From the NCBI RefSeq assembly GCF_964204865.1, contig NC_135260.1:3844001-3908000 (forward strand): a DNA stretch of 64,000 nt, written 5' to 3'. Numbering within the stretch: position 1 is the stretch's first letter; every line of letters begins with the position of its first letter. This document shows, piece after piece, positions 12,812 through 61,696 of this stretch. Made by a program: the position numbers and the translations under genes. This stretch comes from Styela clava. Its lineage: Eukaryota. Under the pieces are notes generated by a model, which saw only the letters and a list, made by a program, of their open reading frames with translations, was not told the origin of the DNA and ran no database searches.

Positions 12812-14776
12812 ATGGCTGATTTTGAAAAATCCGTAAAGATTACCCACTCATTGAATGTACTTACATCATTTAATGAACTAAAACAATCCAACTGCATTTG
12901 TAACTTCACAATCAAAGTTGGTGACAAATCTTTCAGAGTCCATCGAGACCTGCTTGGCGCAGTATCAAAGTACTTCAAAGGCATGTTTTCGAGTAACATG
13001 GTTGAGGCTCGGAATGGTTTTGTCATTATGAAAGACATCTGTGCTGATGCTGTAGGGCAGTGTGTAGATTTCATGTATACTGGTGAAGCAAATCCATCCA
13101 TGGAATCTGTTGAAAATACTTTGTATGCTTCCAACTTAATGCAGCTTGAAATATTATCAGGTATATGCTTCAATTTCATGAAAAACAATTTGTCAGTGCA
13201 GCATTGCTTTCTCGTGGTCAGGTTGGCAAGACTTTATAATTGCACAGAGCTACAAACCATTTCTGAGCGATTCATTGTGGATAATTTTGAGTCTCTGATT
13301 TTGGGTGAAAATTTTCTACATCTGAGCAAAGAAGAACTCGTATTTTATCTGCAAAAGTTGGATAAAAAACATGGAGTAGTTTGGCATGCTGTGAGAAGTT
13401 GGATTTCAAACAAAGATGAAACAATTGGATCAGAATTAATGGCGACTTTGCATTTTGAAGAGTTTCCTTATAAATTTTTGCTCACTGATCTTCTAAATGA
13501 TTTTTTGGTAGAAAGTTCTCCAGATGCAAAAAGTTTTGTCATCAAGAATTTGCTTTCGAATATTGATGGGTTGAAAGAGAATTTGTCTCTCGACACTTTA
13601 TTTCTTTTGAGGAAGATTAATCGGATCGATAACAAAGTTTGCTCAGAGAATGTGAGAAATATAATCAATGAATTTATGGCTCAGAATTTTGAACAGATTG
13701 TACCGCTGGATGAATTTGTCGAGTTGGAAAAAGATGAAATTTATATCTTGTTCAAATCTCCGGAAACAAAATATTCTTCAGAGAAAATTAAATGGGAAGC
13801 TGCACTGAAATGGGCCAAACAAAGTCGTCGTCATCGGAAAGTTTTTCCAGACTTGTTCGAGTTGATAAAACTTGAGGATTTTCCTGGTGATTTTATTCGA
13901 CAAACAGTCAGAAATGAACCTTTGGTTAAGGATTCGCACAAGTGTAAAGATTTATTGCTTGATGTCTTTGTCAGAGCCCCTGTGACTAAACTGGTGCCAC
14001 ACATTGCTGTCTCAACAGAGACTGACATAAAAACTCTGAATCTCCAAACAAATCAATGGTCTAGTTTGCATTCAGATTATAATGTTGGAATTCATCTTGT
14101 CAATGTTAAGGGACAATTGTATGCTTCAGATGGGAATGAATTGTCTTTGCTACAAGACGGTCGGTGGACTAAGAAGGCTAAGATTGGGAGTAAGAGTGAT
14201 GGATTGGATAAGATTGTTTATCTCAAGGGTGGGATTTATATTATCAACTTAGATCAGCATACAATGCGATATAACATTGCCGAAGACAGATGGGATAAGA
14301 ATTTACCTTCATGTTGTCTTGATTATCGTTTTTGTGCTGCTGCCTCTGATGAGTTTATATATGCGATGGGAGGTTGGTCAACACAAAAAGAAGCAAAAGT
14401 ATACGATCCTGGAACAAAGAAATGGTCTTCCCTGCCACAGATGATTTATGGAACAGCAGATGGAGCAGCAGTCGTTTTTCAAAGTATGGTTTATGTACTG
14501 GGAGGTTGGAATGGAGAGCGCTCCCACAACCTTGTTCAATGTTATAACCCTGTTGTTCGATCATGGGCACAAATTGCAAGTATGAAGATGAATAGAAGTT
14601 GGTTGAGTGCATGTGTTGCTGATAATAAAATGTATGCTATCGGTGGTGCTAGATGTGAAAACCAGACTGAGGATTCTATTGAAACATTCAATGAAGAAAC
14701 TGGTGAATGGGAAATAGTCTGTGAAATGAATTGGCCCGGGGTGGACTGGGTTCATTGCTGTAGCTTTGCTCGATAG
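12812..14776 (+). CDS. K1: kelch-like protein, BTB-BACK-BACK-Kelch, 654 aa, single exon
   Basis: BTB (FTIKVGDKSFRVHRDLLGAVSKYFKGMFSSNMVE..VDFMYTG), two BACK-like segments and kelch blades (IYAMGGW, VYVLGGW, MYAIGG). Open ATG to TAG. Confidence 0.93.
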   Translation: MADFEKSVKITHSLNVLTSFNELKQSNCICNFTIKVGDKSFRVHRDLLGAVSKYFKGMFSSNMVEARNGFVIMKDICADAVGQCVDFMYTGEANPSMESVENTLYASNLMQLEILSGICFNFMKNNLSVQHCFLVVRLARLYNCTELQTISERFIVDNFESLILGENFLHLSKEELVFYLQKLDKKHGVVWHAVRSWISNKDETIGSELMATLHFEEFPYKFLLTDLLNDFLVESSPDAKSFVIKNLLSNIDGLKENLSLDTLFLLRKINRIDNKVCSENVRNIINEFMAQNFEQIVPLDEFVELEKDEIYILFKSPETKYSSEKIKWEAALKWAKQSRRHRKVFPDLFELIKLEDFPGDFIRQTVRNEPLVKDSHKCKDLLLDVFVRAPVTKLVPHIAVSTETDIKTLNLQTNQWSSLHSDYNVGIHLVNVKGQLYASDGNELSLLQDGRWTKKAKIGSKSDGLDKIVYLKGGIYIINLDQHTMRYNIAEDRWDKNLPSCCLDYRFCAAASDEFIYAMGGWSTQKEAKVYDPGTKKWSSLPQMIYGTADGAAVVFQSMVYVLGGWNGERSHNLVQCYNPVVRSWAQIASMKMNRSWLSACVADNKMYAIGGARCENQTEDSIETFNEETGEWEIVCEMNWPGVDWVHCCSFAR

Positions 14777-16379
14777 ATGAGTAGCCAGTGATAAGAGTTG
14801 ATGTCGATAAAATATTCTTGTTTTTTGTAAATAGGCTACTATCTGTATTAAATTTTTTTATTGGGTCATTGGGGGTGATTCAACTTCAAATAATATTCTA
14901 ATATCGATGCGTGATATTACTAGCTGTATCATCAATGATAATTTTTCATTTCATGATGTTTTTAATTTGCTATAAATCTACATAATAAAATTTCCACAAT
15001 TTTATATGAATTCTGGATACAACGTTGTGATGTGATTTAGTTTTCTTTTTTTCATAATTACCAAGAAACTTCAATATCACCCATAATTGCGACTTGGCTC
15101 ACTTGCTATCAATTAGCAAAATTGCTGTTAATAATATAAGTTTACTTTTAAAGAATATTTTAGTCTCAACAGTCAAATCACTTTGTTTTAATTCGTCAGA
15201 GATAACAGTGTTTTTAAAACTAAATTTCCGACTTTACAAACTTAATTAAATATCGAACCTTGGTTGTCGCTTTGGTCCCCACTGCTCCCGCGACTTCCTT
15301 TTCCGGTAAAAATGTTTTTTGAATTTTATTTTTTATCAATTTGTATGTTATCATTTACTGAATGGTAAAAAAAACTTGAGTATGACTATTCTATCTTTAC
15401 TCATTATTTCACGGTTCAGGAAGTCATGATGAAATGCATCGACTAAATACCTAAACTTCTAGGTAAAGATCATCTCATTTAAGTCATTGGTATTGATATA
15501 ACTGTAACAAATCCTTTCTGCACAAAATGTTGGTGTTTTATTTCTTTCTTATCAAGTTTGCACTTTTAGGGTTAAATTACACTACTTATTTTATATATTA
15601 TACACACTTATGTGCATTGTATTTATTGATTTATTTTGCTTGATTTCACTCATATTTTGCAACTAATATGGAATACAGAATTTCAGTTTTTGTGAGGCAT
15701 TTTAATACTAATAATATTTCGAATTCATTTATTATACAGTTCAGTTTCATTTTCTCTCCCTCCATATGCATTTGCATACTCCATTTGTAATATCATAGTT
15801 CATCCAAGTCTGTATTTTGTAAGAAAGAACAATGGATAATTTTTTTCACACTGAAAAATAAGTAATTGTGACAAGTTGGAATTTTTTTGAATGTTTTTGT
15901 AAGTTATTTTCTTTAATTGCTAATCCGAGTTTTTGTATATTTAGCTTTGGTATATATATATTTGATTTATTGCTGTTTTCTTAGTTTTTATTTGTTTTTA
16001 GTTTCTTCTGTACACTGTTGGGGCAAGCTGTGCATCTTCATAACTATATACCGTAATTACCATTCGTAGGAAGCTCAAGTTTCATCGAACTGTTTTTGTA
16101 GCTATTTTCACATATTCTATTTTCCACTGTGATAGCAAGTTGTGCGATTCCTAAATATTCTGGTTTTCTTACATATTTCATTTTGATCTCTGCACTTAAT
16201 ACTTTGTAATTAATTTTTATATTATCATTTTTGGGATTCTCAAGAACCCTTCAAGATTGAATTTCTGACATTTGCACTACAGTTGTTAATACATAGCTGT
16301 TTATTTATTTTGGTGACAGAATAACTGATTTAATCGTGTGAATTTGTTATCGAATGTGAATATATTTATTATTTTTTCG

Positions 16380-16570
16380 ATCTATAGATTAAACCGTAGC
16401 TATGTTAACAGTAATCTGTTCACAAAGACAGCAGTATTGAAATAGATTTGATTATTTAGTGACCCACACTCAAGTTTGTTTAAAACTGATGGCTCGGTAC
16501 TATATGCGACGATTCGATATGATACGCCTGAAGACTTAATATTTACACAGTTGATCTTCAATATATGATA
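16380..16570 (+). repeat. Partial companion module downstream of K1
   Basis: tatagattaaaccgtagctatgttaacagtaatctgttcacaaagacag..agtgacccacactcaagtttg matches the module start at 4690 and 62790. Confidence 0.7.
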
Positions 16571-16644
16571 TCGGAGAGAAGAAAAGTGATAAGCTTATAT
16601 ATGAAAATCTGGGGAAGGAAGAGTTAAAATAAATAGTAAATCTG

Positions 16645-20552: not shown

Positions 20553-23500
20553 ATGGCTGATTTTAAAAAATCTGCAAAGATCAAGACTTTATGATCGTAC
20601 AGAGCTACAAATCATTGCTGAGCGATTTATTGTGGATAATTTTGAGTCTTTGATTTTGGGTGAAGATTTTCTACATTTCAGTGAAGAAAATCTTGTATTT
20701 TATCTGCAAAAGTTGAATAAAAAGCATGAAGTAGTTTGGCATGCTGTGAGAAGATGGATTCTAAACAAAGGTGGAAAGATTGGATCAGAACTGATGGGGA
20801 CTTTGCATTTTGGAGAGTTTTCTTATAACTTTCTGCTCACTGTTCTGCTAAATGATTCTTTGGTAAAAACCTCTCCAGAAGCAAAAAGTTTTGTCATCAA
20901 AAAATTGCTTTCGAATATCGATGGGTTGAGAGAAAATTTGTCTCTCGACACTTTATTCATTCTGAGGAAGATTAATCGTCTTGAAAACAAAGTTGACTCA
21001 GATAATGTCAGAAAAATATTCAATGAATTTATGGCTCAGAGTTTTGAACAGATTGTACCAATGGATGAATTTATTGAATTAGAGCAAGATGAAATTTTCT
21101 TCTTGTTCAAATCTCCGGTAACAAAATATTCTTCAGAGAAAATTAAATGGGAAGCTGCACTGAAATGGGCCAAACGAAGTCGTCGCCATAAGAAATTTTT
21201 TCCAGACTTATTTGAGTTGATAAAACTTCAGGATTTTTCTGATGATTTTATTCAACAAACAGTCAGAAATGAACCTTTAGTTAAAGAGTCGCATGAATGT
21301 AAAGATTTATTGCTTGATATTCATTTTCCCAGAGCTCAGATGGGAATACTTGTCCCACATATTGCTGTCTCGACAAGAACAGGTATAAAGACTCTGAATC
21401 TCCAAACAAATCAATGGTCTAGTTTGCAGTCAGATGATGATGTTGGCATTCATCTTGTCAATGCTGAGGGACGATTGTATGCTTCAGATGGGAATGAATT
21501 ATCTTTGCTGCAGGATGGGCAATGGATTAGGAAGACCAAGGTTAAAAGAAAGAAAGTAAACGATAATACAGTTTATCTCAAGGGTGGGATTTATATTATC
21601 GGCTTTGATCAGCATACAGTGCGTTATGACATTGCCAAAGACAAATGGAATAGGAATTTGCCCCCATGTCTCCTTGATTATGGATTTTGTGCTGCTGCCT
21701 CTGGTGGGTTCTATATGTTCTAATATTTAAGCCCAGAGTATTCTACTACCTACCAGTATATTTATTGTTATTATGTGTAACATATTGTTGTGTTTGGAGT
21801 TAGAAATAAATTAGTAGAGAATAGATGACCACCACTGCCAGCGCGCAGCCGGGATTTTCAAAATCGGAAATTCTCATTGCCGCCTGCAACACCCACCGCG
21901 ATTCCGCGCTTGTTAAAAGAGCCGTCTTGTCAGCGTATAATGATCATTCTGTTACGTAAAATATTCAATCCATGACAACTACGAGATTCTAAAATATCTT
22001 TGTATATTAATTTAATGTGTCCAACATAACTCGCGGTTGCTTCTTCTTACGTCAAAAAAAAACATTACTATTCGGTCCACGGAAATCTGTGACCTAAAAT
22101 TACGAGATAAACTGCTTGATGTATTTAATTTTAATATGTATTTTTGCAATCTTGCCAACTCGTTATTGCCGTTAGAAAAATCTCAAACAATTATATAAAA
22201 TCCTGTTAAGTGTAGAGAATAATTCATTTCATACAATGAATATACATATAAAGTTTAGCAGTAAATTAAAAATACATATTCATCGCCGCGATTATGCCAC
22301 CTGTTAGAAGAGTCGACTTTTACAACAAATAATATAACAACAAATATATATTTTTCTGTTGTGCAAAGTGATGAATTCGTGACCAACACGGGCATATTTA
22401 AAATGTCTTGCTCTTATTAATTTAATTGTCTTCAATTTAAACTGCGGTTGCGTCGACAAAATAAAATCCTCACCACTCTTATATACCATTGCAATCAGCG
22501 GCCATAAAAATAAAAACGTGAGGTAAACTGTCCGATTAAATATTGTTTTTATCCGTATTTTGCGAATTCGGCAAATATTTAGATGTACTTGTTAACAGTG
22601 ACTCCGCTCGATCGAAATGCTCAGAGTAAAATATCTCAGAGTAAAATTTATTTCATCACAATAAAATTGATTGAATATACCTCAGAATAACTATAATATA
22701 ACATTCTCACAACCAGGGAAAAAGTCGTGTTTTAAACCTTGTATCGTGTTAACCCGAAAATATTTGACGGCAATTTAAAGTAAAGGATAATCAGGCAAAT
22801 CCCGCCCTCAGTGACGATACGTTCCTAAACGCTGACCAAACATAATGTGCACACGAAATTTTGTGATTTTCACTGCCTAGAAAAGCGTTTTTTAAATTTT
22901 CGCGGGACTCAATAAAACTTATGTTGTTTACGGTTTTGTTTTCAGTATTTTAAATTGCCGCTTTTCAATCAAAAAGTTGCGTTGTCTTTAGAAACTCGCC
23001 GCCTATGAACGTATTTACCAGATTCACAATTCCGTGCGCATACAAAAATAAAATAAATGTTATCGTTATCGTGGAACAAATTTGTGGAAAATTTTCGTTT
23101 TAGAGAAAATAACACAATCGTAATAGCGTTTACGGGCCTAAATAACACGTTACGCTGATGAGTGATAAAAACAATCGCGCGCAAGTTTCTATCGAGAATG
23201 TTTTCATTCAACGGAAACGTCTTGAAAGCGGCGTCGAAAATGTGTGACGTCACACAAATATCCGATATTCTTATGAACGTGAATTCCGATATTCGAATAA
23301 TGAGATATTCGAATACATTCGAATACTTCATTCGAATTGGCCATCCCTGGTTATAACCCTGTTGTTCGCTCATGGACAGAAATTGCAAAAATGGAGATGA
23401 ATAGATTCAGATTCAGTGCATGTGTTGTTGATAATAAAATGTATGTAGTAGGTGGTGCTAAAGATAAAGGTCTGAATAAGGAATCTATTGAAACATTCAA

Positions 23501-23585
23501 TGAATTATCTGGTGAATGGGAAATAGTCTGTGAAATGGATCGACCTAAGCTGGAATGGGTTTATTGCTGTAGCTATGCTCAATAG
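20553..23585 (+). pseudogene. K2: kelch-like pseudogene (BTB deleted, propeller interrupted)
   Basis: The ATG at 20553 is fused to the BACK region by a 386-bp deletion relative to K1, giving MADFKKSAKIKTL*. Homology breaks at ~21717 and resumes at 23351 (YNPVVRSW..CCSYAQ*) after ~1.6 kb of foreign DNA, with ~190 bp of kelch sequence lost. Confidence 0.9.
21718..23349 (-). mobile_element. Insertion in K2 ending in a hAT-like terminus
   Basis: The right end reads CAGGGATGGCCAATTCGAAT.. on the minus strand, with clustered TTCGAATA subterminal motifs. No matching left TIR or TSD. Confidence 0.6.
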
Positions 23586-25840: not shown

Positions 25841-26683
25841 AAGTACCGGTATATAATATAAACATAATAGTCAAAAATGTGTCTGTGGATTCAAAATATT
25901 ATACAAGTTAATAACTGGAGTTGAAATTTGCATCATCGTCGAGCCGAAGTCTTAAAATGTTTATCAGGTTTGGAGTTGAATGTAAAATCTCTACGATTTC
26001 ACCACAACAGAATTACAATTTGGAACATTCTCATATTATAAATTATGTCGATAACTGTTAAAAATATCCACATAACTCAAATTTCATACTGGCATTAAAA
26101 GCCACATAAATCATTTTCACAAGAAATCTTGGAGTTTTATATTTGTATTATTTTGATATAAATTTTTGCAGCAGTCTTCAAACTTCATGAAATATTTTAA
26201 AATTCTCTCAAATAAATAATGTTAAAATTTATTATATATAATGAAATGTTGCATATGGAGAAAAGTAAAAGCATATGAATAATATGAAGCAAAAATAATA
26301 TGGCTGCCCGTGAGCTTATGAGCTCAACTCTGCAATTCCATGGCAATGAGGTTCGAACCGATGTTATTCATCTCATGCTGAACACCTCTACCAGAATGTG
26401 TGGCAAATGGTACTGCTCAACTTTAGATAGATTGCTTGTTGTGAAAATATGTGGGGTTTACTTTTTTTCATGGGAGAGGAAAGTCAATAAGACGGCTCAA
26501 TCATATTGCCTCTCATCCGGCAAAAAATAAAATGGTTGAAATGAGAAAATATCAAGAGTGATACAGCTAGGATAGTCAAAAACCTATCTGGGAAGGTTCA
26601 CCCAATGGAAAAGTTTATATAAAATAGTATTTACAAGCAACAAATATATTTCCTCGTTATCAACTTTTACCAAGGTTACACAT

Positions 26684-48158: not shown

Positions 48159-48519
48159 CCATATTCCCCCGAAAATAAGACCTAGCCGAAATATAATACC
48201 TAGCCTGATTTTTAAAAAGGTTTTTAAATCAAACCCTTCCTAAAGTAATACCTAGTCGATAGCGAAAAATTTTGAATTCAAAAATTTATGAATCTAGTGA
48301 CTTGCAAGACATTCCAGATGATGATGATATGATCATTTTTGAATAATCTATATTCATCAATTAATATCGGTTTTTATATTTTGTGTATTTGAAAATCTAG
48401 CATTTCTCAACTTTGTCATTTTGATAGATGAAAATAAAAGACATCCCCCAAAAAGCCCTAGTGTTATTTTTCGAAAGAAAATTTACATAACAGCCTGTTC
48501 TATTTTCACGGAAACACGG
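48159..48519. mobile_element. pogo/Tigger-type MITE (truncated copy 29113-29458; relatives at 37517-37916 and ~53560-53860)
   Basis: TA|ccatattcccccgaaaataagacc ... ttttcacggaaacacgg imperfect TIRs. Confidence 0.65.
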
Positions 48520-51500
48520 TGGAATCAGAAGTAATTGGATATGATATGTTTCACCTAACTTGTGTTTTACAAGTGAATTTGTTTAAATTTAAGCATTTTT
48601 GAATGAAAACAAATTCGTGGCAAACTTTCAAGTAGCAGCTTGATATTGGGCCATATGCTCTGTTGAATTCAGCATTGGCCCACCAGAGTGAAAATAAATT
48701 AATTGTATTTGGCAATAATGAAGGACTTGGAAGGAATATATAAGTCAGTGGCATTATATAAAATATAGAGTTTACAAAGATGAGAATGGAACATTGCTGT
48801 CAAAGACTATAAAACAGTTTTCTCTCATCTAATTTGATTAGCTGGGAGCTGTCGTTTACTGTCAAGGGTACCTCACAGACAATAAAAACATGCTCAAATA
48901 TTTTTAACCAATAACTTCAATTATGTGGATTTCACGACCAAAAAGCTGTTTTATTGGTCATAGTTAACATATATTGCCTGAAGTTTTGAGTCAATCGGAA
49001 CTCACTAATGCTCGATTCTACATTATAATGATTTATAGTCCCAGGCACTGTAGTCCAACCTCGCTCAGAAATTATTCTCTCTTAAATTTCTGAATTAGTG
49101 CGCGTGGACTTGCTTTGAGCACATTTTCATCAAAAAATCTGTAACGTTTATTATCTCTACACCACACTATAGTCCTAACTCGAGCAATAAAATAAGTCTA
49201 AGCTGCATCGAGATATAAGAGTTTGTAGTTTCGTCAACTCCAGCCATCAAATTACCTATTGGCGTCATATTACCAATTTATTTGAAAATTGTGTTTACCA
49301 AACATGGCCAGTGTCTCAGCAGTGTGTTTTACCAACGGACCATGCTCGATCTTACAAATGTAAATTATTACACTATTAACCTATCGAATAACGTCACTTA
49401 ATCTATTTCCTTATGAGCTATGACTAGTTAACCAGCATGACTCGATGCAATATGCAATGCACAAATATATGTACACAACGGTTGATATGTCATTACAATA
49501 TGAGAAGAATTCTAGCCAAATTATATAAGGATTGCACTGTATGTCATTTAACTTGGGATAAATATATGAAGTCGATGGCTAGAAGGTGATCACTAGCAAA
49601 AGCATTTTATAATTCGATTCGAACCGTCTTCCTATCATCAATTCTGACTAGATTCTGAATAATCTGTCACTGGTGCATGAGGAACCCATATTCTCTTTTT
49701 TTAACATAAGATTACCCCCCTTAATACTCTTTTAGGACTGGCATAGATATCATTTCTGAGTCATATCTTTATCATACAATGCATTTTCGCACTGCTCATT
49801 ACGACCAAAGAAGGCACTGTAACAGAAATGTAAGGTGCTAATATTTATGGTAGGCCCCGAATATTTCCAATTCGGCAATAGTCTACCTTTAACACTTTCA
49901 TCGTAAGTACAGGGTGCCAAGGAATTGGATTATTTGGAATATATTCTAGAACTGGAGTGGACAAAGGTTTTTTCAAGGGCCGCACCAAAAAACGTCCGCA
50001 CTAAGAAACATTGACTGTGTACCACTGTGCAGAGCTTTGTTGAAAGTGAATTCCAGGGATTACGGTTTATATACTTCATAAGCTCACTAGAATACAGTAT
50101 TGCGATTTGTTCTAAGAAACATTAGTAAATTGGATTTTCTGTAAATATACTCTTACATTTTTGAGGGCAAGGGCATGGTTTTTCATCTGAATAAGCTGTT
50201 TTATCGACTTCCCTGAACCTCGGGATATATATTCTATCCCAAATAAACAGAAAGAAAAAAAAGGTTATGGTGGGGCATAAACAGCATATATAATTCGACA
50301 CTAACAATAATGCCATCCTATACATTTCATTGATTCCCCAGGTTTGATCAAACATAAATTGTACGAAGTATGATGGACCTTAACTATGTATTACTCTTAG
50401 GCCATTATTCATTTATTTTATTCAATGCAATAAAATAATCCAATCTAAGCTGCATAGAAATATAACTGTTTGTTATTTCGTCAACTCCGGTCATTAAATT
50501 ACCTATTGGCGTCATATAACCAATGTATTAGAAATCGTGTTTCCCAGACATAGTCAGTGTTTCAATCGTGTTTCCCAGACATAGTCAGTGTTTCAGCAGT
50601 GTATTTTACCAACGGACCATGCTCGACCTTACAAATGTAAATTATTACACTATTAAATTATCGAATAACGTCAGCTAATCTATTTCCTTATGAGCTATGA
50701 CTAGTTTATCAGCACGGCTCTATGCAATATGCAAAGGTTGATTTGTCACTAAAATATGAGCAGAATTTCAGCCACATTTTATAAGGATTGGTCTGTATGG
50801 CATTTGACTTGGGATAATTACATAAAGTCAATGGCTAGGTGACCAATAGCAAAAACATCTTATAATTCAATTTGAGGCGTTTTCCCACTTTCCGCGTTTT
50901 CCCACTTTCAATTCTGATTGGGCTCTGAATAATCTGCCACTGATGCAAGAAGATCAACTATTCTCTCTTTTTTTTATCAGATTACCTCCTTTGATACTCT
51001 TTTAGCGCGTGCACAGATATCATTTCTGAGTCATATATTTATCATACGATGCATTTTCACACTGTTCGCTACGAGCAAGGCAGTGTCATAGATATTTAAG
51101 GAGTTAATATTTATGGTAGGTCCAGAATTTTCCCATTCGACATTTGCCTTCCCAATCTAACACTTTCATCATAAGTACAGGGTGCCTCCCAGAGCTTGGG
51201 TTATTGAGAACATATTCTAGAACCGTGGTGGGCAGGCAACGTTTTTTTAAGGGCCGCTCTAAAAAAAATTTGACTGTGTCACCACAGTGCAGGGCTTTGT
51301 TGAGAGTGAATATTGGGGAATAGGATTTATATACTTCAAATAAGATCTTTAGAATACAGTAATGCGGGTTGTTTAAAAACTATTGTTTGATAGAGTAGAT
51401 GGGTGAAACAAAACACAAACTTGACAGCAAATGCGTTTTTTTGTGGCGTGAAGATTGGAGGTGTATACTAAGGATCAATGTTTTTTTTATACAATAATAT

Positions 51501-54439
51501 TTCACTTTTCACAATGATATCATGTGAACAAGGTTTCTCACATATTTTCAATATTATTGACAGTGATGAACTTTTCAAAGTCCCTTGCCAACTGCTATAT
51601 CTTTCACTAGGATAAGTCTGTGCATAGCTCTTAAGTCTCAACCATCGGTGTCACTTGCAATCTTTCTTTAGACTACCATCATCTATGTACTTGTATACTG
51701 CACCCAAGCAATTTGTATGCAATTCTAGAGAATGTATTTGGTGGTAATAAAAGTATAATATCGCACATCATGGAAGCAGTGATTATAAATGACCTTTGAC
51801 CCAGACAACAGACAAAAGTTATTATTAAGGATCAATAAAACAAATATTTTATTAAGAATCATTCAAACAATATTTTTTAATGAATATAACACACAGATAC
51901 TTGATATGTGATAGTTCCTATATTGATCGAATACCAACATTCTATTAATTCACATTGATCTAATATAAGAGCCATTTAATCAAGCCATACATATCAGTGT
52001 ACAATCGATATTTACATGTATTGAATATGATCTGCATTTAGTTTAGATGGTTCCAGTGAGTTTCATAACCAACCCAAGTCACAAAACACCAGTACGTGAT
52101 GGAAATGGAGTTCAATCTCTTATTTAAATAGCAGATTGCAGAGTGGTTGCCTGGGGTATTCAGAAAGCCATCGTTGGTAGGGAGCACTGGAATGGACTTG
52201 TGTAGAGGGTACAGGCTGTGATCGTGAATTCATTGGTGAGTGGTATTGGGTGAATCGGAAGCATCTGTCCTGGTTGGTGATAATACCAGCCTTGAGTGTA
52301 CGATGGAACTCCTGTCACTAGTTGAGAATGTACTCGTTCTGGTGGAACAACTACAGCTAACTACAACAAAACGCGAAATAATCAATGTTATGTGAGAGCA
52401 TGTTCACGATAGTTGTCTGGAATCTTTGTTTGTTTATTATGTGCGCGAAACTGTTTCTCGCTCGTTCAAAATACTTATCTTTGAAGTAATGACAAATTCT
52501 TTCATGTAATTCTAAGCTTTGAAATACTTACCCAAATAAAATTGAATTAGTAGTAAAATAAAAAATTTACAAAAAAAATATGTTGACGTCATCGTGGATA
52601 CGAACACTCGGCTCAAGCATGGATCATAGTTGGATGCCTAAAATGATTTTAGTTAGTGCGGGAATACTTCACAAAACATAAACCTAAAGGTAAAATAGCC
52701 CGAAAATAACTAATATTGCCATATTATGACCAAGGATGCGAGTGCGAATATATGAGAGATCCGGAAACAAAGAGTAGGTTATGCACATCCACTAATAAAG
52801 GAGACAGGACTCTGAGAAAAGTTACAGATGAGCACTGAAGAGAGACATGATACAGAAACTATATTGTGGTGGGGCATACCAACGTATAAAATTTGAAACA
52901 AACTATAATGCCATTATATACCTTTCATTGATTCCCCAGGTTTGGTCAAGCGTAAATTGTACCAAATCTGATGGACCTTGGCTATGTATTACTTTTAAGC
53001 CACAAAAACCATTGTTCATTCATTTTATCTAATCTTACTGAGAAATATAAGTTTTGTCATTGTGATCTGACAATGATTAAAACTTAATTAAATCCCTCTC
53101 TCAATTCAGTCATCATTAATAAATAACTTCAATATAGTAATGGATACCAGAACTGCAACAAACTCAATGACGCATAATTCAACCCAGAACAACATATAAG
53201 TCTGAAGAGGTTCAAAGTTCACCCTGCAGCCGATAACAAATGTTTATTTAGCTGATGCCAGTTCGAACATTAATTTCCTCTCTACTGTAGTACCAGTATG
53301 AGTAACCTTAATAACATCATCCTTAACTTAACAGTCATAAATCTCTTCGCTAAGATGGATTGTACCCCAGCACCCAGCTATATCAATACCTTATAAATTA
53401 AAAGTTATTTATTTTCGATATAGTATGGTTAACCTTACCATGTTCCCTAATTTTTGTTTAGCTAAGATGGATTGTGCACCCTGTTATATCAATGACTTAT
53501 ACCAGGACATGCACAAATTCTTATGTGTGGGCGGGGGTGTCTCAAACATATCGAAACTGTGTTCCCCCGAAAATGTGGCATGGTCCTATTTCTTTACAAA
53601 GAATAACACAAGGGCCTATTTGTAGGGTATTTAGTTTATTTCATTTATCAACAACAAAATTACAAAGTACATAATTACGAGATTTTATTTAATTATAAAT
53701 TAAATGTTTAACTAAAAAACAACTGACCATATCATAATCCTCTGAAATGCCATGCAAGTCAATAGATTCATAAATTTTAATGAAGATTTCATTTAACTGA
53801 AATTTCTGGCGAATTTTTGCATCTACAAAATTTCGCGCTATCGAGTAGGTCCTATTTTGAGGGAATGGAATTTGTCTCTGATTTTAGGACTAATTCCGAT
53901 TATCTTATTCAAAAATTCATTATTTAGAGCAGATGTGTGTAACCTGCGGCCCGCGAAATGAGTTTTTAATTTAATTTGGTAAATCCGATGAAGCTTACCA
54001 AAAATCAATTATAAATAAAATTTGAGCCGATTTCGAATATTTGATCTCTTTTCTACTAACAGTCAGTCTGCAAAAACATCATTCTTAAATTTACAGACTC
54101 ACATCGGTGGGGTGTTAGTGAAGTTATTACTGCAAAAAGGAAATGGCAATTGTTTTATATCAATTGACACTTATCCGAGTCTTTCTCTTAGAACATGGCC
54201 CTATAGAAGCATCGACTGAAATCTAATGACATTTCAGAATAATTTTTTATTGACAAACCGCAATCTTTCCGGTTCGAGACTACTCCATTTATCACACACT
54301 AAATGAGGTGGTGGACTTGTGATTTGGACCAATGATTAACAACCTGTAACAAGGTCATCGTGCCCACAAATTAATCTGTCTGTTAGCTTGCTTTTCACTG
54401 GGATGTGTTATAAGCTTATTACTTCAATTATTCTGGATA

Positions 54440-55090
54440 AATAGAGATCGCTGTGTAGGGAGCACTGGGATTGACTTGTGTAGACGTCGCAGATAATGGC
54501 GAGAATACATTGGCGAATCAGCTATTCCGACTACTGGTTGGTTTGGAAGCGTTTGTCCGAAGGAATGAATTATCGTGGATTGTGAAGCCATCTGGCTCGA
54601 TGGGTGATAGTGTGGTCTTACTACTTGAATAGAGGGGTATGGTGGCCTCCTGTCATTGGTACTTGCCTTGGTGCATCGGGCATTCCTGGGTAATTCAGCA
54701 TTGACAGGTACCATCATATATGGACCATTTGTAAGTCAAAATATGCAATCTGCAAACTTCAATATGTCAAGTTTATACAAAAGTTATTTGTGTACTGTCT
54801 TTGGCTTCACATGGGTTAAGGAAGCTCATGACTGTGAGCATATACCTAACTGATGAGCGGGTTGAAATCTGTATTATAGATTGCCAATGTGTCTGTTCAT
54901 ATTCAATCCTCACATATACAAAATCGGGTTCCGAGCCATTATTTTGACCAAACTTGAGTTTGGGTCACTGGATTGTCAACTCTTCTTCAATACACAAGAC
55001 TTCAACTAGTCCTGTCTTTGAAACAGATTACTGGCAACCTACCCACAGTTGAATCTATATCACTAAAGTTAATAATTGCTTACATATTAG
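54440..55090 (-). repeat. Companion module downstream of K6 (mirror copy ~62757-63407)
   Basis: Homologous to the other module copies; its distal part also resembles 52130-52360 and 32940-33170. Confidence 0.85.
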
Positions 55091-56149
55091 ATAGCTATCT
55101 ACATTTGAATTAGTAGCATATAAAGTATAGAGCACACTAAGTAAATAAATTTGCTGCTCAATGAATAAAAAAGTCCTCTCTGCAGTGGAGTATTGAAGTT
55201 GAAAAATTTAAAAATATTTTTCCACTGAAATTGTCAACATTATCAATCTTATGATTTGAGAATTCAAATATCTATTACATCAAACACATATGGAGTGCAA
55301 TATTACATATAAAGCAAGTGCATATGAACAACATGAAGCAAAGTAATTCAATAAATGCCGATATAAGTGTGAGATAAAATGAACACCAAGCAGTGAAACG
55401 TAACCATTCAAAAATTCAAACTCGATGAGGAGGAAATAAAAAACAGAGGGAGAGTTCAGGATGAATTTGTTACAGTTACAACAATGCCAATGACTTAATG
55501 AGATGATATTTATCTAGAACTGCATTTATTCGGTTAATTACAGGGGTCGGCAACCTTTTGTCGCTCGCGGGCCAAAATAATGGTTGCAAGTAATTGGCTC
55601 AAATTTTTTTTGCCAAGTTAGATCGAAACAGCTAGCGGGTCCGATCAAACGCTGGAATACGCGTGTTTTTAGTAGCCTTGAGGGTCTAAAAAGCATTTTA
55701 AGCTACGGTGCTATCTACGATACAGAAAAATTATTTTTAATTTTTTTATATTTAAAAAGGGGGGGGGGGTCGACCCGCAAAACCACCCCCTGGCTACGTC
55801 ACTGTGCCGACCCCTGGATTAATACATTCTATTATAGTGCTTACTGAATCGTGGAAAAATGAGAAAAAGACTAGAGCACATCTATTTACTAAGGAAAGGT
55901 AACGAATAAAGTTTGGCTAATTGATAGCAAATGAGCCAAATCACAACATGTCTGATATTGAAGTTTCTTGGTAATTATAAATAGGAGTCAACTAAATCAC
56001 ATTATTATGTACAATTTTGTATCTGAAATTGATATTGAATTGAAGGAAAATATTGAATCGTAAGATTCATTGCCATATAGTCAGTATATACAAGATAACA
56101 AGAAACAAGTGTATTTCCTCGTTATCCACTTTTATCATTGATTACTTAT

Positions 56150-58114
56150 TTATCGAGCAAAGCTACAGCAATAGACCCATGGAACCTGAAGCCGATCCAT
56201 TTCACAGACTATTTCCCATTTACCAGTTTTCTCATTGAATGTTTCAATAGAATCCGTCAGGTCTCGATAACTATCCCCACCGACTGCATACATTTTATTA
56301 TCAACAACACATGCACTGAAATATTGTCTATACATCGCCATTACTTCAATTTCTGTCCATGAGCGAACAGTAGGGTTATAACATTGAACATAACAGTGAG
56401 GATACCCCATATCATCTCCTCCCAATACATAAACCATACTTTGAAACACGACTGCTGCACTATCATATGCTTGATGAGACATCTGTGGCAGTGGAGACCA
56501 TTTCTTAATTCCACGATTGTATACTTTTGCTTCTGTCGCAGTTGAATAACCTCCCATCGCATATATAAACTCATCAGAGGCAGCAGCACAAAAACCATGA
56601 TCAAGATCACATGAAGGCAAATTATTATCCCATCTGTCTTTGGCAATGTCATATCGCATTGTATTCTGGTCACGGGTGATAATATAAATCCCACCCTTAA
56701 GATAAACCATCTCATACCTCTCATCACTCTTCCTTTCAACCTTGGCCTTCTTAGTCCATTGCCCATCTTGTAGCAAAGACAATTTATTTCCATCTGAAGC
56801 AAACAATTGTCCCTCACCATTGACAAGGTGAAAGCCAACATCATAATCTGACTGCAAACTAGACCATTGATTTGTTTGGAGATTCAGAGCCTTTATACCA
56901 GTCTTTGTTGTGACAGCAATATGTGGAACAAGTTTTCCCCCCTGAGCTTTGGCATGGAGAATATCAAGCAATAAATCTTTACACTTATGCGACTCTTTAA
57001 CTAAAGGTTCATTTCTGACTGTTTGTCGAATAAACTCATAAGAAAAATCCTGAAGTTTTATCAACCCGAACAAGTCTGAAAAATTTTTTTGATGACGGCG
57101 ACTTTGTTTGGCCCATTTCAGCGCAGCTTCCCATTTAATTTTCTCTGAAGAATATTTTGTTTCCTGAGATTTGAACAAGAAAAAAATTTCAATTTTTTCC
57201 AACTCGATAAATTCATCCAACGGTACAATCTGTTCAAAATTCTGAGCCATGAACTCATTGATTATATTTCTGACATTCTCTGAGCAAACTTTGTTTTTGA
57301 TCCGATTAATCTTCCTCAAAACGAATAAAGTGTTGAGGGATAAATTCACTTTCAACCCATCGATATTTGAAAGCAATTTTTTGATAACAAAACTTTGTGC
57401 ATCTGGAGAACTTTGTACCAAAGAATCATTTAGCAGATCAGTGAGCAAAAACTTATAGGGAAACTCCCCGAAATGCAAAGTCTCCAATAATTCTGATTCA
57501 ATTTTTTCACCTTTGTTCGAAATCCATCTTCTCACAGCATGCCAAACTACCTCATGCTTTTTATCCAACTTTTGCAGATAAAATACGAGTTCTTCTTTGC
57601 TCAGATGTAGGAAATCTTCGCCCAAAATCAGAGACTCAAAATTATCCAAAATGAATTGCTCAGCAATGGTTTGTACCTCTGTGTGATCATAGAGTCTTGC
57701 CAACCTGACCACTAAAAGGCAATGCTGCACTGACAAATTATTTTCCATGAAATTGAAGCATATACTCGATAATACATCAAGCTGCATTAAGTGGGAAGCA
57801 TACAAGATATTTTCAACAGATTCCATGGATGGATTTGCTTCACCGGTGTACATGAAATCTACACACTGCCCTACAGCATCAGCACAGATGTCTTTCATAA
57901 TAACAAAACCATTCCGAGCCTCAACCATGTTACTTGAAAACATGCCTTTGAAGTACTTTGATACTGCGCCAAGCAGATCTCGATGGACTTTGAAAGATTT
58001 GTCACCAACTTGGATTGTGAAGTTACAAATGCAGTCAGATTGTTTTAGTTCATTGAATGATGTAAGTACATTCAATGAGTGGGTAATCTTTGCAGATTTT
58101 TTGAATTCATCCAT
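56150..58114 (-). CDS. K6: kelch-like protein, BTB-BACK-BACK-Kelch, 654 aa
   Basis: Intact ORF colinear with K1. Confidence 0.93.
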   Translation of the reverse strand: MDEFKKSAKITHSLNVLTSFNELKQSDCICNFTIQVGDKSFKVHRDLLGAVSKYFKGMFSSNMVEARNGFVIMKDICADAVGQCVDFMYTGEANPSMESVENILYASHLMQLDVLSSICFNFMENNLSVQHCLLVVRLARLYDHTEVQTIAEQFILDNFESLILGEDFLHLSKEELVFYLQKLDKKHEVVWHAVRRWISNKGEKIESELLETLHFGEFPYKFLLTDLLNDSLVQSSPDAQSFVIKKLLSNIDGLKVNLSLNTLFVLRKINRIKNKVCSENVRNIINEFMAQNFEQIVPLDEFIELEKIEIFFLFKSQETKYSSEKIKWEAALKWAKQSRRHQKNFSDLFGLIKLQDFSYEFIRQTVRNEPLVKESHKCKDLLLDILHAKAQGGKLVPHIAVTTKTGIKALNLQTNQWSSLQSDYDVGFHLVNGEGQLFASDGNKLSLLQDGQWTKKAKVERKSDERYEMVYLKGGIYIITRDQNTMRYDIAKDRWDNNLPSCDLDHGFCAAASDEFIYAMGGYSTATEAKVYNRGIKKWSPLPQMSHQAYDSAAVVFQSMVYVLGGDDMGYPHCYVQCYNPTVRSWTEIEVMAMYRQYFSACVVDNKMYAVGGDSYRDLTDSIETFNEKTGKWEIVCEMDRLQVPWVYCCSFAR

Positions 58115-58529
58115 ATTCTGTATCTTGGAAGTGATTCACAAATGACAAGGCTTTAATAGTAATATAGATGACAGCAAGATGATTACCTAACTAGATTCTG
58201 TGGTATTTGTATATTAGGTAAATATTTGTAGTATTGGAGAATTTCAAATTTGCAATACAATATAAAGAGAGGAGAGATAGAAACAAGATTCAAGGTTACA
58301 AAAAGGTCAAATCCTAATTTGTTATATAGATGTCCTGGTGCAGTGATTTTCAAACATCCAATCGCCATGAGATTGCGATTTTAGGATTAATATGAAAATC
58401 CTATCATGTACACTGCAACCTACTTTCTCAAGTAGGTTGTTATTTCGTATAGATAACAGACATTTCAATGCGTCTCTTTCATTAGAGACAAAGCTGACTA
58501 TTCAGTAAGGGGCAAACTTGGTTTCCTGT

Positions 58530-59010
58530 TAGTAAGTTCAGTAGTGCATCATGCACTCAGTAGTAGAATAGACTCATTTCAGAGCAAGGTGACCGTTGGC
58601 ATTGGTGGCTGAAACGCTAAGAGCTACCAAAACTATTTAGAATTTTGAAATTCCATTCAGTAGGAGACTCATCTCTGTACAGCGTTACGAAAACCACTAA
58701 AATACCAAGAGCAACTGATTCTATTCAGAATTCAAAGCGATTGATGGTGAATTACGCGTCCTCACTCAGAAGTGTAAAAGTCTCATCTCAGAGCACAGTT
58801 ACGAACAATCATCTAAACTTCAAAACCTACTGGGGGGATTTAAAATGTTGGTGGTGCAATATACGTATTTACACAATAGTGAAGGAAACTCACCTTAAGT
58901 TAAGTCACAGGCGACCACTGAAATGCAGGGAGCTACTTGGAGACTATTTGAAAGTATGGTGGTGCATTATGTGCACTCAATCAGAAGTGAAGAACACTCA
59001 TCTCTGAAAA
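58530..59010 (-). repeat. Degenerate ~105-bp tandem array in the palindrome spacer
   Basis: Reverse-complement unit cores (ctcat/ctcac) near 58571, 58666, 58781, 58887 and 58996. Confidence 0.75.
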
Positions 59011-59731
59011 ATGTAATGGGTGCCATCAGACTATTTGTGCAGTTGAATTTCAAGTCTTGCACACTTGCAACATTATTCTTTCAAACCATGGCTCCCGACT
59101 CATATTTTCTAACGTCTAGCTAGAATGCTTGTTCCACGTTTCATATGTACTGCTTGCTACTGTTTATTGTGATGTCACATACCAAGTGACTTGAATTCTG
59201 GAAATGCATTTGGAAAGGGCTAGTTTTAGACGAGCCTACAATGCCAGCCCATAGTACGTGAATCATTTAAGACAGGGGTTTGCAACTTTCGGCCGGGGGC
59301 AAAATGCGGTTTGCGGACAAGTGCCAATTTTGAATAGTGAGTGTTTGAATAGCTTTGTCTCTAATGAAAGAGACGCATTGAAATGTCTGTTATCTATACG
59401 AAATAACAACCTACTTGAGAAAGTAGGTTGCAGTGTACATGATAGGATTTTCATATTAATCCTAAAATCGCAATCTCATGGCGATTGGATGTTTGAAAAT
59501 CACTGCACCAGGACATCTATATAACAAATTAGGATTTGACCTTTTTGTAACCTTGAATCTTGTTTCTATCTCTCCTCTCTTTATATTGTATTGCAAATTT
59601 GAAATTCTCCAATACTACAAATATTTACCTAATATACAAATACCACAGAATCTAGTTAGGTAATCATCTTGCTGTCATCTATATTACTATTAAAGCCTTG
59701 TCATTTGTGAATCACTTCCAAGATACAGAAT

Positions 59732-61696
59732 ATGGATGAATTCAAAAAATCTGCAAAGATTACCCACTCATTGAATGTACTTACATCATTCAATGAACTA
59801 AAACAATCTGACTGCATTTGTAACTTCACAATCCAAGTTGGTGACAAATCTTTCAAAGTCCATCGAGATCTGCTTGGCGCAGTATCAAAGTACTTCAAAG
59901 GCATGTTTTCAAGTAACATGGTTGAGGCTCGGAATGGTTTTGTTATTATGAAAGACATCTGTGCTGATGCTGTAGGGCAGTGTGTAGATTTCATGTACAC
60001 CGGTGAAGCAAATCCATCCATGGAATCTGTTGAAAATATCTTGTATGCTTCCCACTTAATGCAGCTTGATGTATTATCGAGTATATGCTTCAATTTCATG
60101 GAAAATAATTTGTCAGTGCAGCATTGCCTTTTAGTGGTCAGGTTGGCAAGACTCTATGATCACACAGAGGTACAAACCATTGCTGAGCAATTCATTTTGG
60201 ATAATTTTGAGTCTCTGATTTTGGGCGAAGATTTCCTACATCTGAGCAAAGAAGAACTCGTATTTTATCTGCAAAAGTTGGATAAAAAGCATGAGGTAGT
60301 TTGGCATGCTGTGAGAAGATGGATTTCGAACAAAGGTGAAAAAATTGGATCAGAATTATTGGAGACTTTGCATTTCGGGGAGTTTCCCTATAAGTTTTTG
60401 CTCACTGATCTGCTAAATGATTCTTTGGTACAAAGTTCTCCAGATGCACAAAGTTTTGTTATCAAAAAATTGCTTTCAAATATCGATGGGTTGAAAGTGA
60501 ATTTATCCCTCAACACTTTATTCGTTTTGAGGAAGATTAATCGGATCAAAAACAAAGTTTGCTCAGAGAATGTCAGAAATATAATCAATGAGTTCATGGC
60601 TCAGAATTTTGAACAGATTGTACCGTTGGATGAATTTATCGAGTTGGAAAAAATTGAAATTTTTTTCTTGTTCAAATCTCAGGAAACAAAATATTCTTCA
60701 GAGAAAATTAAATGGGAAGCTGCGCTGAAATGGGCCAAACAAAGTCGCCGTCATCAAAAAAATTTTTCAGACTTGTTCGGGTTGATAAAACTTCAGGATT
60801 TTTCTTATGAGTTTATTTGACAAACAGTCAGAAATGAACCTTTAGTTAAAGAGTCGCATAAGTGTAAAGATTTATTGCTTGATATTCTCCATGCCAAAGC
60901 TCAGGGGGGAAAACTTGTTCCACATATTGCTGTCACAACAAAGACTGGTATAAAGGCTCTGAATCTCCAAACAAATCAATGGTCTAGTTTGCAGTCAGAT
61001 TATGATGTTGGCTTTCACCTTGTCAATGGTGAGGGACAATTGTTTGCTTCAGATGGAAATAAATTGTCTTTGCTACAAGATGGGCAATGGACTAAGAAGG
61101 CCAAGGTTGAAAGGAAGAGTGATGAGAGGTATGAGATGGTTTATCTTAAGGGTGGGATTTATATTATCACCCGTGACCAGAATACAATGCGATATGACAT
61201 TGCCAAAGACAGATGGGATAATAATTTGCCTTCATGTGATCTTGATCATGGTTTTTGTGCTGCTGCCTCTGATGAGTTTATATATGCGATGGGAGGTTAT
61301 TCAACTGCGACAGAAGCAAAAGTATACAATCGTGGAATTAAGAAATGGTCTCCACTGCCACAGATGTCTCATCAAGCATATGATAGTGCAGCAGTCGTGT
61401 TTCAAAGTATGGTTTATGTATTGGGAGGAGATGATATGGGGTATCCTCACTGTTATGTTCAATGTTATAACCCTACTGTTCGCTCATGGACAGAAATTGA
61501 AGTAATGGCGATGTATAGACAATATTTCAGTGCATGTGTTGTTGATAATAAAATGTATGCAGTCGGTGGGGATAGTTATCGAGACCTGACGGATTCTATT
61601 TAAACATTCAATGAGAAAACTGGTAAATGGGAAATAGTCTGTGAAATGGATCGGCTTCAGGTTCCATGGGTCTATTGCTGTAGCTTTGCTCGATAA
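59732..61696 (+). pseudogene. K7: inverted copy of K6 with two nonsense substitutions
   Basis: CGA>TGA at 60818-60820 and GAA>TAA at 61601-61603. Otherwise the same protein as K6 except KIGSE vs KIESE. Confidence 0.88.

What the first reader, a model, noticed from the sequence alone, without database searches (positions are those of the whole stretch)
12812..61696. Diversifying array of intronless BTB-kelch genes with hypervariable substrate-binding loops: candidate variable-receptor ubiquitin-ligase system
Seen: seven paralogs whose BTB is almost invariant while variation and indels concentrate in kelch loops. After the GG motifs: WSTQKE/WSTGRE/WAAWRK/WSTERE/YSTATE; WNGERSHNL/YDKNRFNRN/DDIGYPHCY/IAGRSGNL; ARCENQTED/AKDKGLNKE/AGSKGLNKD/DSYRDLTN/AQGLTED. 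Between blades: GSKSDGLDK/EKESHWSDK/ERKSDERYE/ERLCDENDK; YGTADG/YKTAGS/HQAYDS/YKTFCS; NRSWL/NRFRF/KRGWF/CRQYF/SRGLF. Established: in KLHL/Keap1 proteins the B-C and D-A loops form the substrate-binding face and BTB plus 3-box binds CUL3. Nematode F-box and MATH-BTB families show the same constant-scaffold, variable-binder pattern, which has been interpreted as defence. Inference: this cluster is a birth-and-death repertoire of CUL3 adaptors aimed at fast-evolving (pathogen, transposon or allorecognition) targets.
Basis: partly seen in the sequence, partly recalled or inferred. Interest (0 to 1): 0.85.

Follow-up and report, generated by a model that had tools for sequence, protein, structure and literature searches.

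The report
Diversifying BTB-Kelch gene array, sea squirt
The sea squirt Styela clava carries a 115-kb cluster of single-exon BTB-BACK-BACK-Kelch genes (the type that hands substrates to cullin-3 ubiquitin ligases) whose front end is conserved while a few residues on the predicted substrate-binding face change faster than neutral and are swapped between copies, which is the pattern expected of a receptor repertoire chasing fast-changing targets.

Summary
The window holds seven paralogs: four intact (K1, K3, K5, K6), one with a frameshift (K4), one with two nonsense codons (K7) and one fragment (K2). The cluster runs beyond the window: 13 loci over about 115 kb, plus one copy on another chromosome. 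Hit names identify the genome as Styela clava.

On nine intact copies, dN/dS is 0.27 in BTB-BACK-BACK, 0.56 in Kelch strands and 0.39 in loops of the opposite face. In the B-C and D-A loops it is about 1.1 (local dS) to 1.5 (domain-wide dS). My own codon site models favour a class with omega about 5 covering about 13% of Kelch codons (LRT 89; N-terminal control 6). The signal survives other trees, segment trees, indel removal and synonymous-rate variation (bootstrap p<0.002). Thirteen of 15 selected sites lie in B-C/D-A loops of blades III-VI.

Paralogs are mosaics: loops move as gene-conversion patches. Seven full-length family proteins recorded for S. clava only under nr/UniRef mostly have no counterpart here. 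K1 is probably transcribed.

CUL3 binding and a defence role remain inferred. The scan reported a sibling array elsewhere in this genome (s1-822910). This is a new variant of a known kind, comparable to MATH-BTB, F-box and TRIM expansions.

The parts
12812..14776 (+). K1: intact 654-aa BTB-BACK-BACK-Kelch gene with a single coding exon
   Evidence: ORF. Pfam finds BTB, two BACK stretches and Kelch. AF2 model has pLDDT 85 and six blades. Foldseek matches KBTBD2/KLHL22-CUL3 and Keap1.
14204..14659 (+). K1 codons 465-616: the stretch holding the 13 positively selected loop codons (465, 480, 505, 525, 547, 549, 566, 570, 571, 596, 597, 614, 616) in B-C and D-A loops of blades III-VI
   Evidence: M2a posterior at least 0.9. 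Loops were defined from DSSP on the model. Five of the sites also pass the dual-rate model.
14777..16464 (+). Probable K1 3' UTR
   Evidence: Contigs of 1454 and 1790 nt in runs X1 and X2 run from 14699 to 16152 and 16464. There is no coverage at 12400-12799 or beyond 16464.
20581..21711 (+). K2 fragment 1 (K1 residues 139-515); the BTB domain is missing
   Evidence: tblastn; Pfam finds BACK only.
23352..23582 (+). K2 fragment 2 (K1 residues 578-654), about 1.6 kb downstream of fragment 1
   Evidence: tblastn.
26684..28642 (-). K3: intact, 652 aa
35038..37001 (-). K4: full length with one frameshift near codon 75. It is K6-type from about codon 248 on; its 5' third is of different origin.
35404..35514 (-). 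Gene-conversion patch in K4, carrying the D-A loop III-IV and the B-C loop IV. Here K4 matches L005 at the positions where it differs from K6.
   Evidence: Codon-by-codon comparison; windowed differences.
45551..47506 (-). K5: intact, 651 aa counted from the Met shared with the family (an in-frame ATG lies 27 nt upstream). Its 3' end is nearly identical to L003.
56150..58114 (-). K6: intact, 654 aa; lies in one arm of the inverted duplication
59732..61696 (+). K7: differs from K6 at three nucleotides. Its two private changes are both nonsense (codon 363 CGA to TGA, codon 624 GAA to TAA).
53847..64000 (.). Inverted duplication: arms 53847-58495 and 59351-64000 are 99.85% identical with an 855-bp spacer. 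It reaches the window end.
   Evidence: Self-blastn.
26626..58123 (.). Two-gene segmental duplication: K3-K4 (26626-37009) corresponds to K5-K6 (45483-58123). Intergenic DNA is 95-97% identical, but K3 and K5 are only 88% identical.
   Evidence: Self-blastn.

Best explanation
This is one cluster of a Styela clava-specific family of BTB-BACK-BACK-Kelch proteins with single coding exons. They are built like KLHL/KBTBD substrate adaptors of cullin-3 RING ligases.

Inferred mechanism: the conserved BTB domain dimerises and, together with the first BACK (3-box), docks CUL3. The six-bladed Kelch propeller presents its B-C/D-A loop face to a substrate, which is then ubiquitinated.

Shown here:
- The scaffold half is under purifying selection.
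- About a dozen codons in the binding-face loops of blades III-VI are under positive selection.
- Small indels fall in the same loops.
- Loops are moved between paralogs by short gene-conversion patches.
- Copies are gained by tandem, inverted and segmental duplication.
- Copies are lost by frameshift, nonsense mutation and truncation.
- The set of copies differs from the other S. clava protein set on record.

The likeliest purpose (inference) is recognition of fast-changing intracellular targets such as viral or other pathogen proteins, or selfish-element proteins.
For: Architecture:
- Pfam finds BTB, BACK twice and Kelch.
- The AF2 model has pLDDT 85 and six blades.
- Foldseek top hits are KBTBD2-CUL3 and KLHL22-CUL3 complexes; the Kelch domain matches Keap1/KLHL12 at target TM 0.77-0.82.
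- The phi-x-E motif M-V-E is invariant in 16 proteins.
- BTB homodimer model: score 0.65, best of 3 controls 0.01, at least 96% contact agreement between runs, pLDDT at least 84. The mark was reached by 21 of 30 solved homodimers and 0 of 23 solved single chains. The pass may come from memory of solved BTB dimers.

Selection:
- dN/dS is 0.27 in the N-terminal half, 0.56 in strands, 0.39 in A-B/C-D loops and 1.12 in B-C/D-A loops.
- M2a against M1a gives LRT 89 in Kelch (omega2 5.0, 12.7% of codons) and 6.1 in the N-terminal half.
- 13 of 15 sites with posterior at least 0.9 lie in B-C/D-A loops (Fisher p=3e-5).
- The signal is robust to a star tree, the N-terminal tree, indel removal and segment-specific trees.
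- With synonymous-rate variation allowed, 2dlnL is 24.7, against a maximum of 16.8 in 502 null simulations.
- Independent set: in seven proteins recorded only under nr/UniRef, entropy is 0.85 bits in those loops against 0.25 elsewhere, and 1.61 at my selected sites (p=2e-9).

Turnover and mosaicism.

Different repertoire in the other protein set.

Probable transcription of K1.
Against: - No binding to CUL3 or to any substrate was tested.
- As a class, the binding-face loops have dN/dS 1.12 (bootstrap 0.78-1.53) against their own dS, so omega above 1 rests on site models.
- Site models can be inflated by gene conversion and multi-nucleotide changes, and both occur here.
- The codon-model code is my own, not PAML or HyPhy.
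- The runs taken as RNA are only guessed to be RNA, and their tissue is unknown.
- The near-allelic pair P0003/L002 shows no enrichment of differences in the loops (3 of 21).
- A defence role rests on analogy only.
Confidence: 0.7

Rival explanations
1. The architecture and diversifying selection are the same, but the targets are endogenous. The adaptors would co-evolve with other fast-evolving host proteins, or take part in intragenomic or reproductive conflict (transposon control, gamete self-incompatibility, drive-like systems), rather than pathogen defence.
For: The genome holds hundreds of BTB-BACK genes (510 first-look candidates), so potential partner families exist. Transposon remains surround the array. 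The repertoire differs from the other S. clava protein set, as at self-recognition loci.
Against: Nothing links these genes to any partner. The proteins have no signal peptide or membrane domain by Pfam, which argues against direct cell-surface allorecognition.
Confidence: 0.3
2. The loop variability is relaxed constraint in redundant duplicates, plus patchy gene conversion and multi-nucleotide changes. These would fool site models, and there would be no adaptive diversification.
For: - Class-level dN/dS in the loops is about 1.
- Recombination is detected (AU p about 0.02-0.04; PHI-like p=0.013).
- Clustered changes exist, for example ten substitutions in 18 bp.
- Local dS is higher in loops (0.28-0.37) than in strands (0.13).
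Against: - Recombination cannot create new amino-acid states, yet selected sites carry 5-6 residues among 8 distinct copies, with 60 minimal amino-acid changes against 6 synonymous.
- The signal holds with segment trees and with synonymous-rate variation.
- Loops on the opposite face stay constrained (0.39).
- Nine copies keep 650-codon frames at dS of about 0.2-0.29.
Confidence: 0.1
3. The proteins work without CUL3, for example as cytoskeletal or scaffolding Kelch proteins, or as decoys that bind targets without ubiquitinating them.
For: CUL3 binding was not tested. The doubled BACK domain is not seen in the solved KLHL/KBTBD chains that matched, which are 511-569 residues long against 654 here. 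It could alter cullin docking.
Against: The invariant phi-x-E motif and strong purifying selection on BTB and both BACKs (omega 0.19-0.30) fit a conserved partner such as CUL3.
Confidence: 0.1

Closest known systems
KLHL/KBTBD BTB-BACK-Kelch adaptors of CRL3 ligases (Keap1, KLHL12, KLHL20, KLHL22, KBTBD2)
   Same: Same domain order and fold. Six-bladed Kelch with target TM 0.77-0.82 to Keap1/KLHL12. Full-length matches to KBTBD2-CUL3 and KLHL22-CUL3. phi-x-E motif present. Predicted BTB dimer.
   Different: - BACK is doubled (helical region 132-388).
- The coding region is a single exon.
- Sequence identity to solved relatives is only about 13-22%.
- The genes form a species-restricted tandem family, not single conserved orthologues.
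- The binding face is under positive selection.
MATH-BTB and F-box adaptor expansions of nematodes and grasses (Thomas 2006, Genome Res, cited from my own knowledge; the grass expansion is reviewed in PMC4091423)
   Same: A constant cullin-docking module joined to a variable substrate-binding module; tandem arrays; birth-and-death turnover; positive selection focused on the binding surface.
   Different: The variable module is a Kelch propeller, not MATH or FTH/FBA. The host is a tunicate, the sister group of vertebrates. Loop-sized gene-conversion patches between paralogs are documented here.
TRIM5 and fish finTRIM B30.2 families (own knowledge)
   Same: E3-linked intracellular receptors with hypervariable surface loops under positive selection and lineage-specific expansion.
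   Different: Those are RING E3 ligases in one chain. Here the adaptor must recruit a separate cullin-RING core.
Sibling BTB-BACK-Kelch array in the same genome (scan finding s1-822910)
   Same: Same genome, same architecture and the same reported pattern of a constant front end with a few fast-evolving binding-face residues.
   Different: It lies on a different piece of the genome. I do not know whether it is the chromosome-13 arrays, which are only about 34-37% identical to K1. I did not re-test that array.

Membership tests
KLHL/KBTBD-type CRL3 substrate adaptors | N-terminal BTB/POZ domain | tested here: met
   Pfam PF00651, E 1e-20 to 1e-22 in all complete copies.
KLHL/KBTBD-type CRL3 substrate adaptors | BACK/IVR domain following the BTB domain (carries the 3-box) | tested here: met
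   PF07707 matches twice (about 132-224 and 278-366). The model is all-helical over 132-388. The doubling departs from the norm.
KLHL/KBTBD-type CRL3 substrate adaptors | C-terminal six-bladed Kelch propeller | tested here: met
   24 strands in six blades, with C-terminal strand closure. Foldseek to Keap1/KLHL12 Kelch: rmsd about 3 A, target TM about 0.8.
KLHL/KBTBD-type CRL3 substrate adaptors | phi-x-E motif of the BTB domain that contacts CUL3 | tested here: met
   M63-V64-E65 is invariant in 16 family proteins. The role of the motif comes from established KLHL-CUL3 structures (own knowledge).
KLHL/KBTBD-type CRL3 substrate adaptors | Physical binding to CUL3 | not testable with these tools
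   Five multi-exon cullin loci were found. Exons were not joined, so no complex was modelled.
KLHL/KBTBD-type CRL3 substrate adaptors | BTB-mediated homodimer | tested here: inconclusive
   The model supports a dimer: score 0.65 against best control 0.01, at least 96% contact agreement, pLDDT at least 84, with 21 of 30 solved homodimers and 0 of 23 single chains reaching the mark. The pass may reflect memory of solved BTB dimers.
Diversifying E3-adaptor repertoires (MATH-BTB / F-box type) | Lineage-specific tandem expansion with pseudogenes | tested here: met
   13 loci in 115 kb: 8 intact, 3 lesioned, 2 fragments. Only S. clava proteins match at 68% identity or more.
Diversifying E3-adaptor repertoires (MATH-BTB / F-box type) | Positive selection confined to the substrate-binding surface, with the cullin-docking part conserved | tested here: met
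   Caveat: class-wide dN/dS is about 1.1.
Diversifying E3-adaptor repertoires (MATH-BTB / F-box type) | Role in defence or conflict | not testable with these tools
   The runs are coded, so no tissue or challenge information was available.

The most novel reading that the evidence does not exclude
Tunicates may have a germline-encoded repertoire of intracellular receptors that varies between haplotypes. Dimeric CRL3 adaptors with near-invariant BTB interfaces could pair combinatorially. Their Kelch binding loops would be diversified by positive selection and by shuffling of loop cassettes between paralogs through gene conversion. The system would act as a restriction-factor-like defence against viruses or selfish elements.
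Probability: 0.25. Interest if true: 0.85.

Novelty: new variant of a known kind. Interest (0 to 1): 0.6.

Why it matters
Expanded, positively selected ubiquitin-ligase adaptors are known from nematodes, plants (MATH-BTB, F-box) and vertebrates (TRIM). I found no paper describing a Kelch-based version or any BTB/Kelch expansion in Styela clava. The S. clava genome paper does not mention BTB, Kelch or ubiquitin.

If these genes are defence or conflict receptors, the closest invertebrate relatives of vertebrates have a large, individually variable repertoire of intracellular recognition proteins built on CRL3.

The system is also directly testable. The selected residues are named. The constant half offers a single handle (the M-V-E motif) for making cullin-dead substrate traps. 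The loop patches give natural specificity swaps.

Tried and rejected
I could not get DNA or gene order for the S. clava proteins recorded only under nr/UniRef, so they entered the protein-level analysis only.
- A profile search with alignment A2 returned the same 21 S. clava proteins. The word-based candidate step does not reach relatives at 30-40% identity, so 'species-restricted' holds only for close kin.
- CUL3 complex: the cullin loci are multi-exon.
- Class-level tests gave mixed results. Against local dS the loop ratio is 1.12 and not significant. Against the Kelch-wide synonymous scale it is 1.49. That figure is confounded by the higher local dS, so I do not rely on it.
- The near-allelic pair P0003/L002 shows no loop enrichment.
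- The loose-end sequence at 12206 does not occur elsewhere in the window. The 5' UTR structure is unresolved.
- Only K1 was laid against reads (one call, 6 kb limit). Expression of K3, K5 and K6 was not tested.
- Mapping onto Keap1 contact residues was not attempted. No model coordinates are available, and loop alignment at 22% identity is unreliable.
Full report
**What is there.** The window is G000:C14:3844001-3908000 of a 377-Mb genome. The names attached to identical and near-identical database proteins say Styela clava, TaxID 7725.

- K1 (12812-14776, +), K3 (26684-28642, -), K5 (45551-47506, -) and K6 (56150-58114, -) are intact frames of 651-654 codons.
- K4 (35038-37001, -) is full length with one frameshift near codon 75.
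- K7 (59732-61696, +) has two in-frame stops.
- K2 is two fragments (20581-21711 and 23352-23582), lacking the BTB domain and residues 516-577.

**Extent of the cluster.** The cluster is larger than the window. It runs from 8 kb upstream to 43 kb downstream and holds 13 loci: 8 intact, 3 full length but lesioned, and 2 fragments. One more intact copy lies on chromosome piece C4, and an old pseudogene with 21 stops lies on C10. The array is surrounded by transposon remains: a DDE transposase and DUF7869 at the left end, and a LINE reverse transcriptase beyond the right end.

**Architecture.** Pfam finds BTB, BACK twice and Kelch. An AlphaFold2 model of K1 has mean pLDDT 85. It shows a BTB domain, an all-helical region from 132 to 388, and 24 strands forming six blades closed by the C-terminal strand.

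Foldseek's best full-length matches are KBTBD2-CUL3-RBX1 and CUL3-KLHL22 complexes. The propeller superposes on Keap1, KLHL12 and KLHL20 Kelch domains at about 3 A, with target TM 0.77-0.82.

The M-V-E triplet at residues 63-65 occupies the place of the phi-x-E motif that contacts CUL3 in solved KLHL complexes (own knowledge). It is invariant in all 16 family proteins examined.

A model of residues 1-235 as a homodimer scored 0.65 against 0.01 for the best of three controls. Contact agreement between runs was at least 96% and pLDDT at least 84. That mark was reached by 21 of 30 solved homodimers and 0 of 23 solved single chains. The tool warns that such a pass may come from memory of solved BTB dimers.

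The double-BACK layout is shared by more distant Styela BTB-Kelch genes and by Kelch-less BTB-BACK-BACK arrays on C5 and C6.

**Where the variation lies.** I defined strands and loops from DSSP on the model, not from variability. On nine intact copies the mean pairwise figures are as follows:

| Region | dN | dS | dN/dS |
|---|---|---|---|
| BTB-BACK-BACK | 0.069 | 0.253 | 0.27 |
| Kelch strands | 0.073 | 0.130 | 0.56 |
| A-B and C-D loops (opposite face) | 0.101 | 0.256 | 0.39 |
| B-C and D-A loops | 0.314 | 0.282 | 1.12 (bootstrap 0.78-1.53) |
| B-C and D-A loops, blades IV-VI only | 0.354 | 0.268 | 1.32 |

The variation is therefore concentrated on the face that binds substrate in Keap1 and KLHL complexes. 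As a class, however, the loops cannot be told from neutral. A tree-free count of minimal changes gives the same picture.

**Site models.** PAML and HyPhy are not installed, so I wrote GY94-type M0, M1a and M2a models with F3x4 frequencies and full branch-length optimisation.
- Kelch partition: M2a beats M1a by LRT 89.2, with omega 5.0 on 12.7% of codons.
- N-terminal partition: LRT 6.1.
- Fifteen codons have posterior at least 0.9. Thirteen lie in B-C or D-A loops of blades III-VI, two lie in the linker before blade I (387, 392), and none lies in strands or opposite-face loops (Fisher p=3e-5).
- The LRT stays large on other trees: 147 on a star tree, 106 on the N-terminal tree, 77 after removing columns near indels, and 83 summed over three 90-codon segments each with its own tree.
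- Allowing synonymous-rate variation (a grid of alpha and beta fitted by EM) reduces the signal to 2dlnL 24.7 in Kelch, against 2.6 in the N-terminal part. Five sites remain, all in the binding-face loops.
- In 502 simulations under the fitted null, the largest value was 16.8 and the 95th percentile 8.4.

**Independent check.** Seven full-length S. clava proteins are recorded in the database only under nr/UniRef, not on this genome's contig. I take them to come from another assembly or individual, which is an inference. Their entropy is 0.85 bits in B-C/D-A loops against 0.24-0.27 elsewhere. At my 15 sites it is 1.61 against 0.43 for the other Kelch positions (p=2e-9).

**Recombination and turnover.** The paralog tree is star-like, with dS of 0.20-0.29 for almost all pairs. 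The N-terminal and Kelch halves reject each other's trees (AU p=0.04 and 0.02). A four-gamete PHI-like test gives p=0.013.

Mosaics can be seen directly.
- K4 is K6-type from codon 248 on. Across 35404-35514 it carries the D-A loop III-IV and the B-C loop IV of L005, which lies 58 kb away.
- K5 and L003 share their last 60 codons, including a two-codon deletion.

K3-K4 and K5-K6 form a two-gene segmental duplication. Its intergenic DNA is 95-97% identical, yet K3 and K5 are only 88% identical, with dS about 0.2. This means the gene bodies have exchanged sequence with other paralogs since the duplication.

K6 and K7 sit in a 99.85%-identical inverted duplication, and a third near-identical copy lies 9.5 kb further on. 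K7's only two private changes are both nonsense. About 5% of random substitutions would create a stop, so two of two has p about 0.003.

**Variation between individuals.** Of the nr/UniRef family proteins, only two have near matches here (96.8% and 94.5%). Six full-length ones are at most 79-86% identical to anything in this genome, both by blastp and by six-frame search of the whole genome.

**Expression.** Four runs, guessed to be RNA from their roughly 55-80 Mb of contigs, were laid on 10800-16790.
- In two runs of one study, contigs match K1-specific hypervariable stretches with no mismatch. One contig of 1454 or 1790 nt continues from 14699 to 16152 or 16464.
- Nothing covers 12400-12799 or beyond 16464.
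- This looks like a K1 mRNA with a 3' UTR of 1.4-1.7 kb. However, the RNA label is a guess and the tissue is unknown.
- Runs of two other studies hold pieces only 95-99% alike, suggesting other alleles or copies.
- Only K1 was tested.

**Comparison with what is known.** The family passes every sequence and fold criterion of KLHL/KBTBD CRL3 adaptors that I could test. CUL3 binding itself was not testable: five cullin loci exist, but all are multi-exon and I left the joining step out.

Functionally it resembles the MATH-BTB and F-box expansions of nematodes and grasses, and the TRIM B30.2 families.

I found no paper on BTB or Kelch expansion in S. clava or other tunicates. The genome paper PMC7540406 does not contain the words kelch, BTB or ubiquitin.

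The scan has already reported a sibling array elsewhere in this genome (s1-822910). I did not re-test it.

**Verdict.** The reading as a diversifying birth-and-death repertoire of CUL3-type adaptors is supported in its evolutionary part. CUL3 binding, substrates and purpose remain inferred. I rate it a new variant of a known kind, with interest 0.6.

Noticed in passing
window 59732-61696 (K7) against 56150-58114 (K6): K7's only two private nucleotide changes in 1965 nt are both nonsense mutations (CGA to TGA at codon 363, GAA to TAA at codon 624). About 5% of random substitutions would make a stop, so two of two has p about 0.003. This may be chance, or selection for silencing one arm of the palindrome.
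   Followed up: partly
window 26626-37009 against 45483-58123: In a two-gene segmental duplication, the intergenic DNA is 95-97% identical but the K3/K5 gene pair is only 88% identical, with dS about 0.2. The gene bodies have diverged, or been converted by other paralogs, faster than their neutral flanks.
   Followed up: partly
Kelch region of all paralogs (K1 13997-14773): Synonymous divergence is uneven: 0.13 in strands against 0.28-0.37 in binding-face loops. This would fit homogenised frameworks with old loop lineages, as at MHC peptide-binding regions. It could also reflect multi-nucleotide patches.
   Followed up: no
window 13205-13975 (K1 residues 132-388): The BACK domain is doubled in this family. 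It is also doubled in distant Styela BTB-Kelch genes and in Kelch-less BTB-BACK-BACK arrays on C5 and C6 (about 440-480 aa ORFs, dozens of copies).
   Followed up: partly
window 420-3457: Decayed DDE_1 (pogo/Tigger-like) transposase ORFs lie on the minus strand, and a DUF7869 ORF on the plus strand, at the left edge of the window.
   Followed up: partly
L045:436-8747 (window 108936-117247, beyond the right end of the array): A CD20/MS4A-like ORF, a 1066-aa LINE reverse transcriptase ORF and a weak GDSL-lipase-like ORF flank the last family member.
   Followed up: partly
window 12071-12211: Contigs of all four runs show a back-joint from 12201 or 12211 to 12071, with 2 or 12 extra letters. This suggests a tandem-repeat length variant or a repeat element upstream of K1. 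Its relation to the K1 5' UTR is unknown.
   Followed up: no
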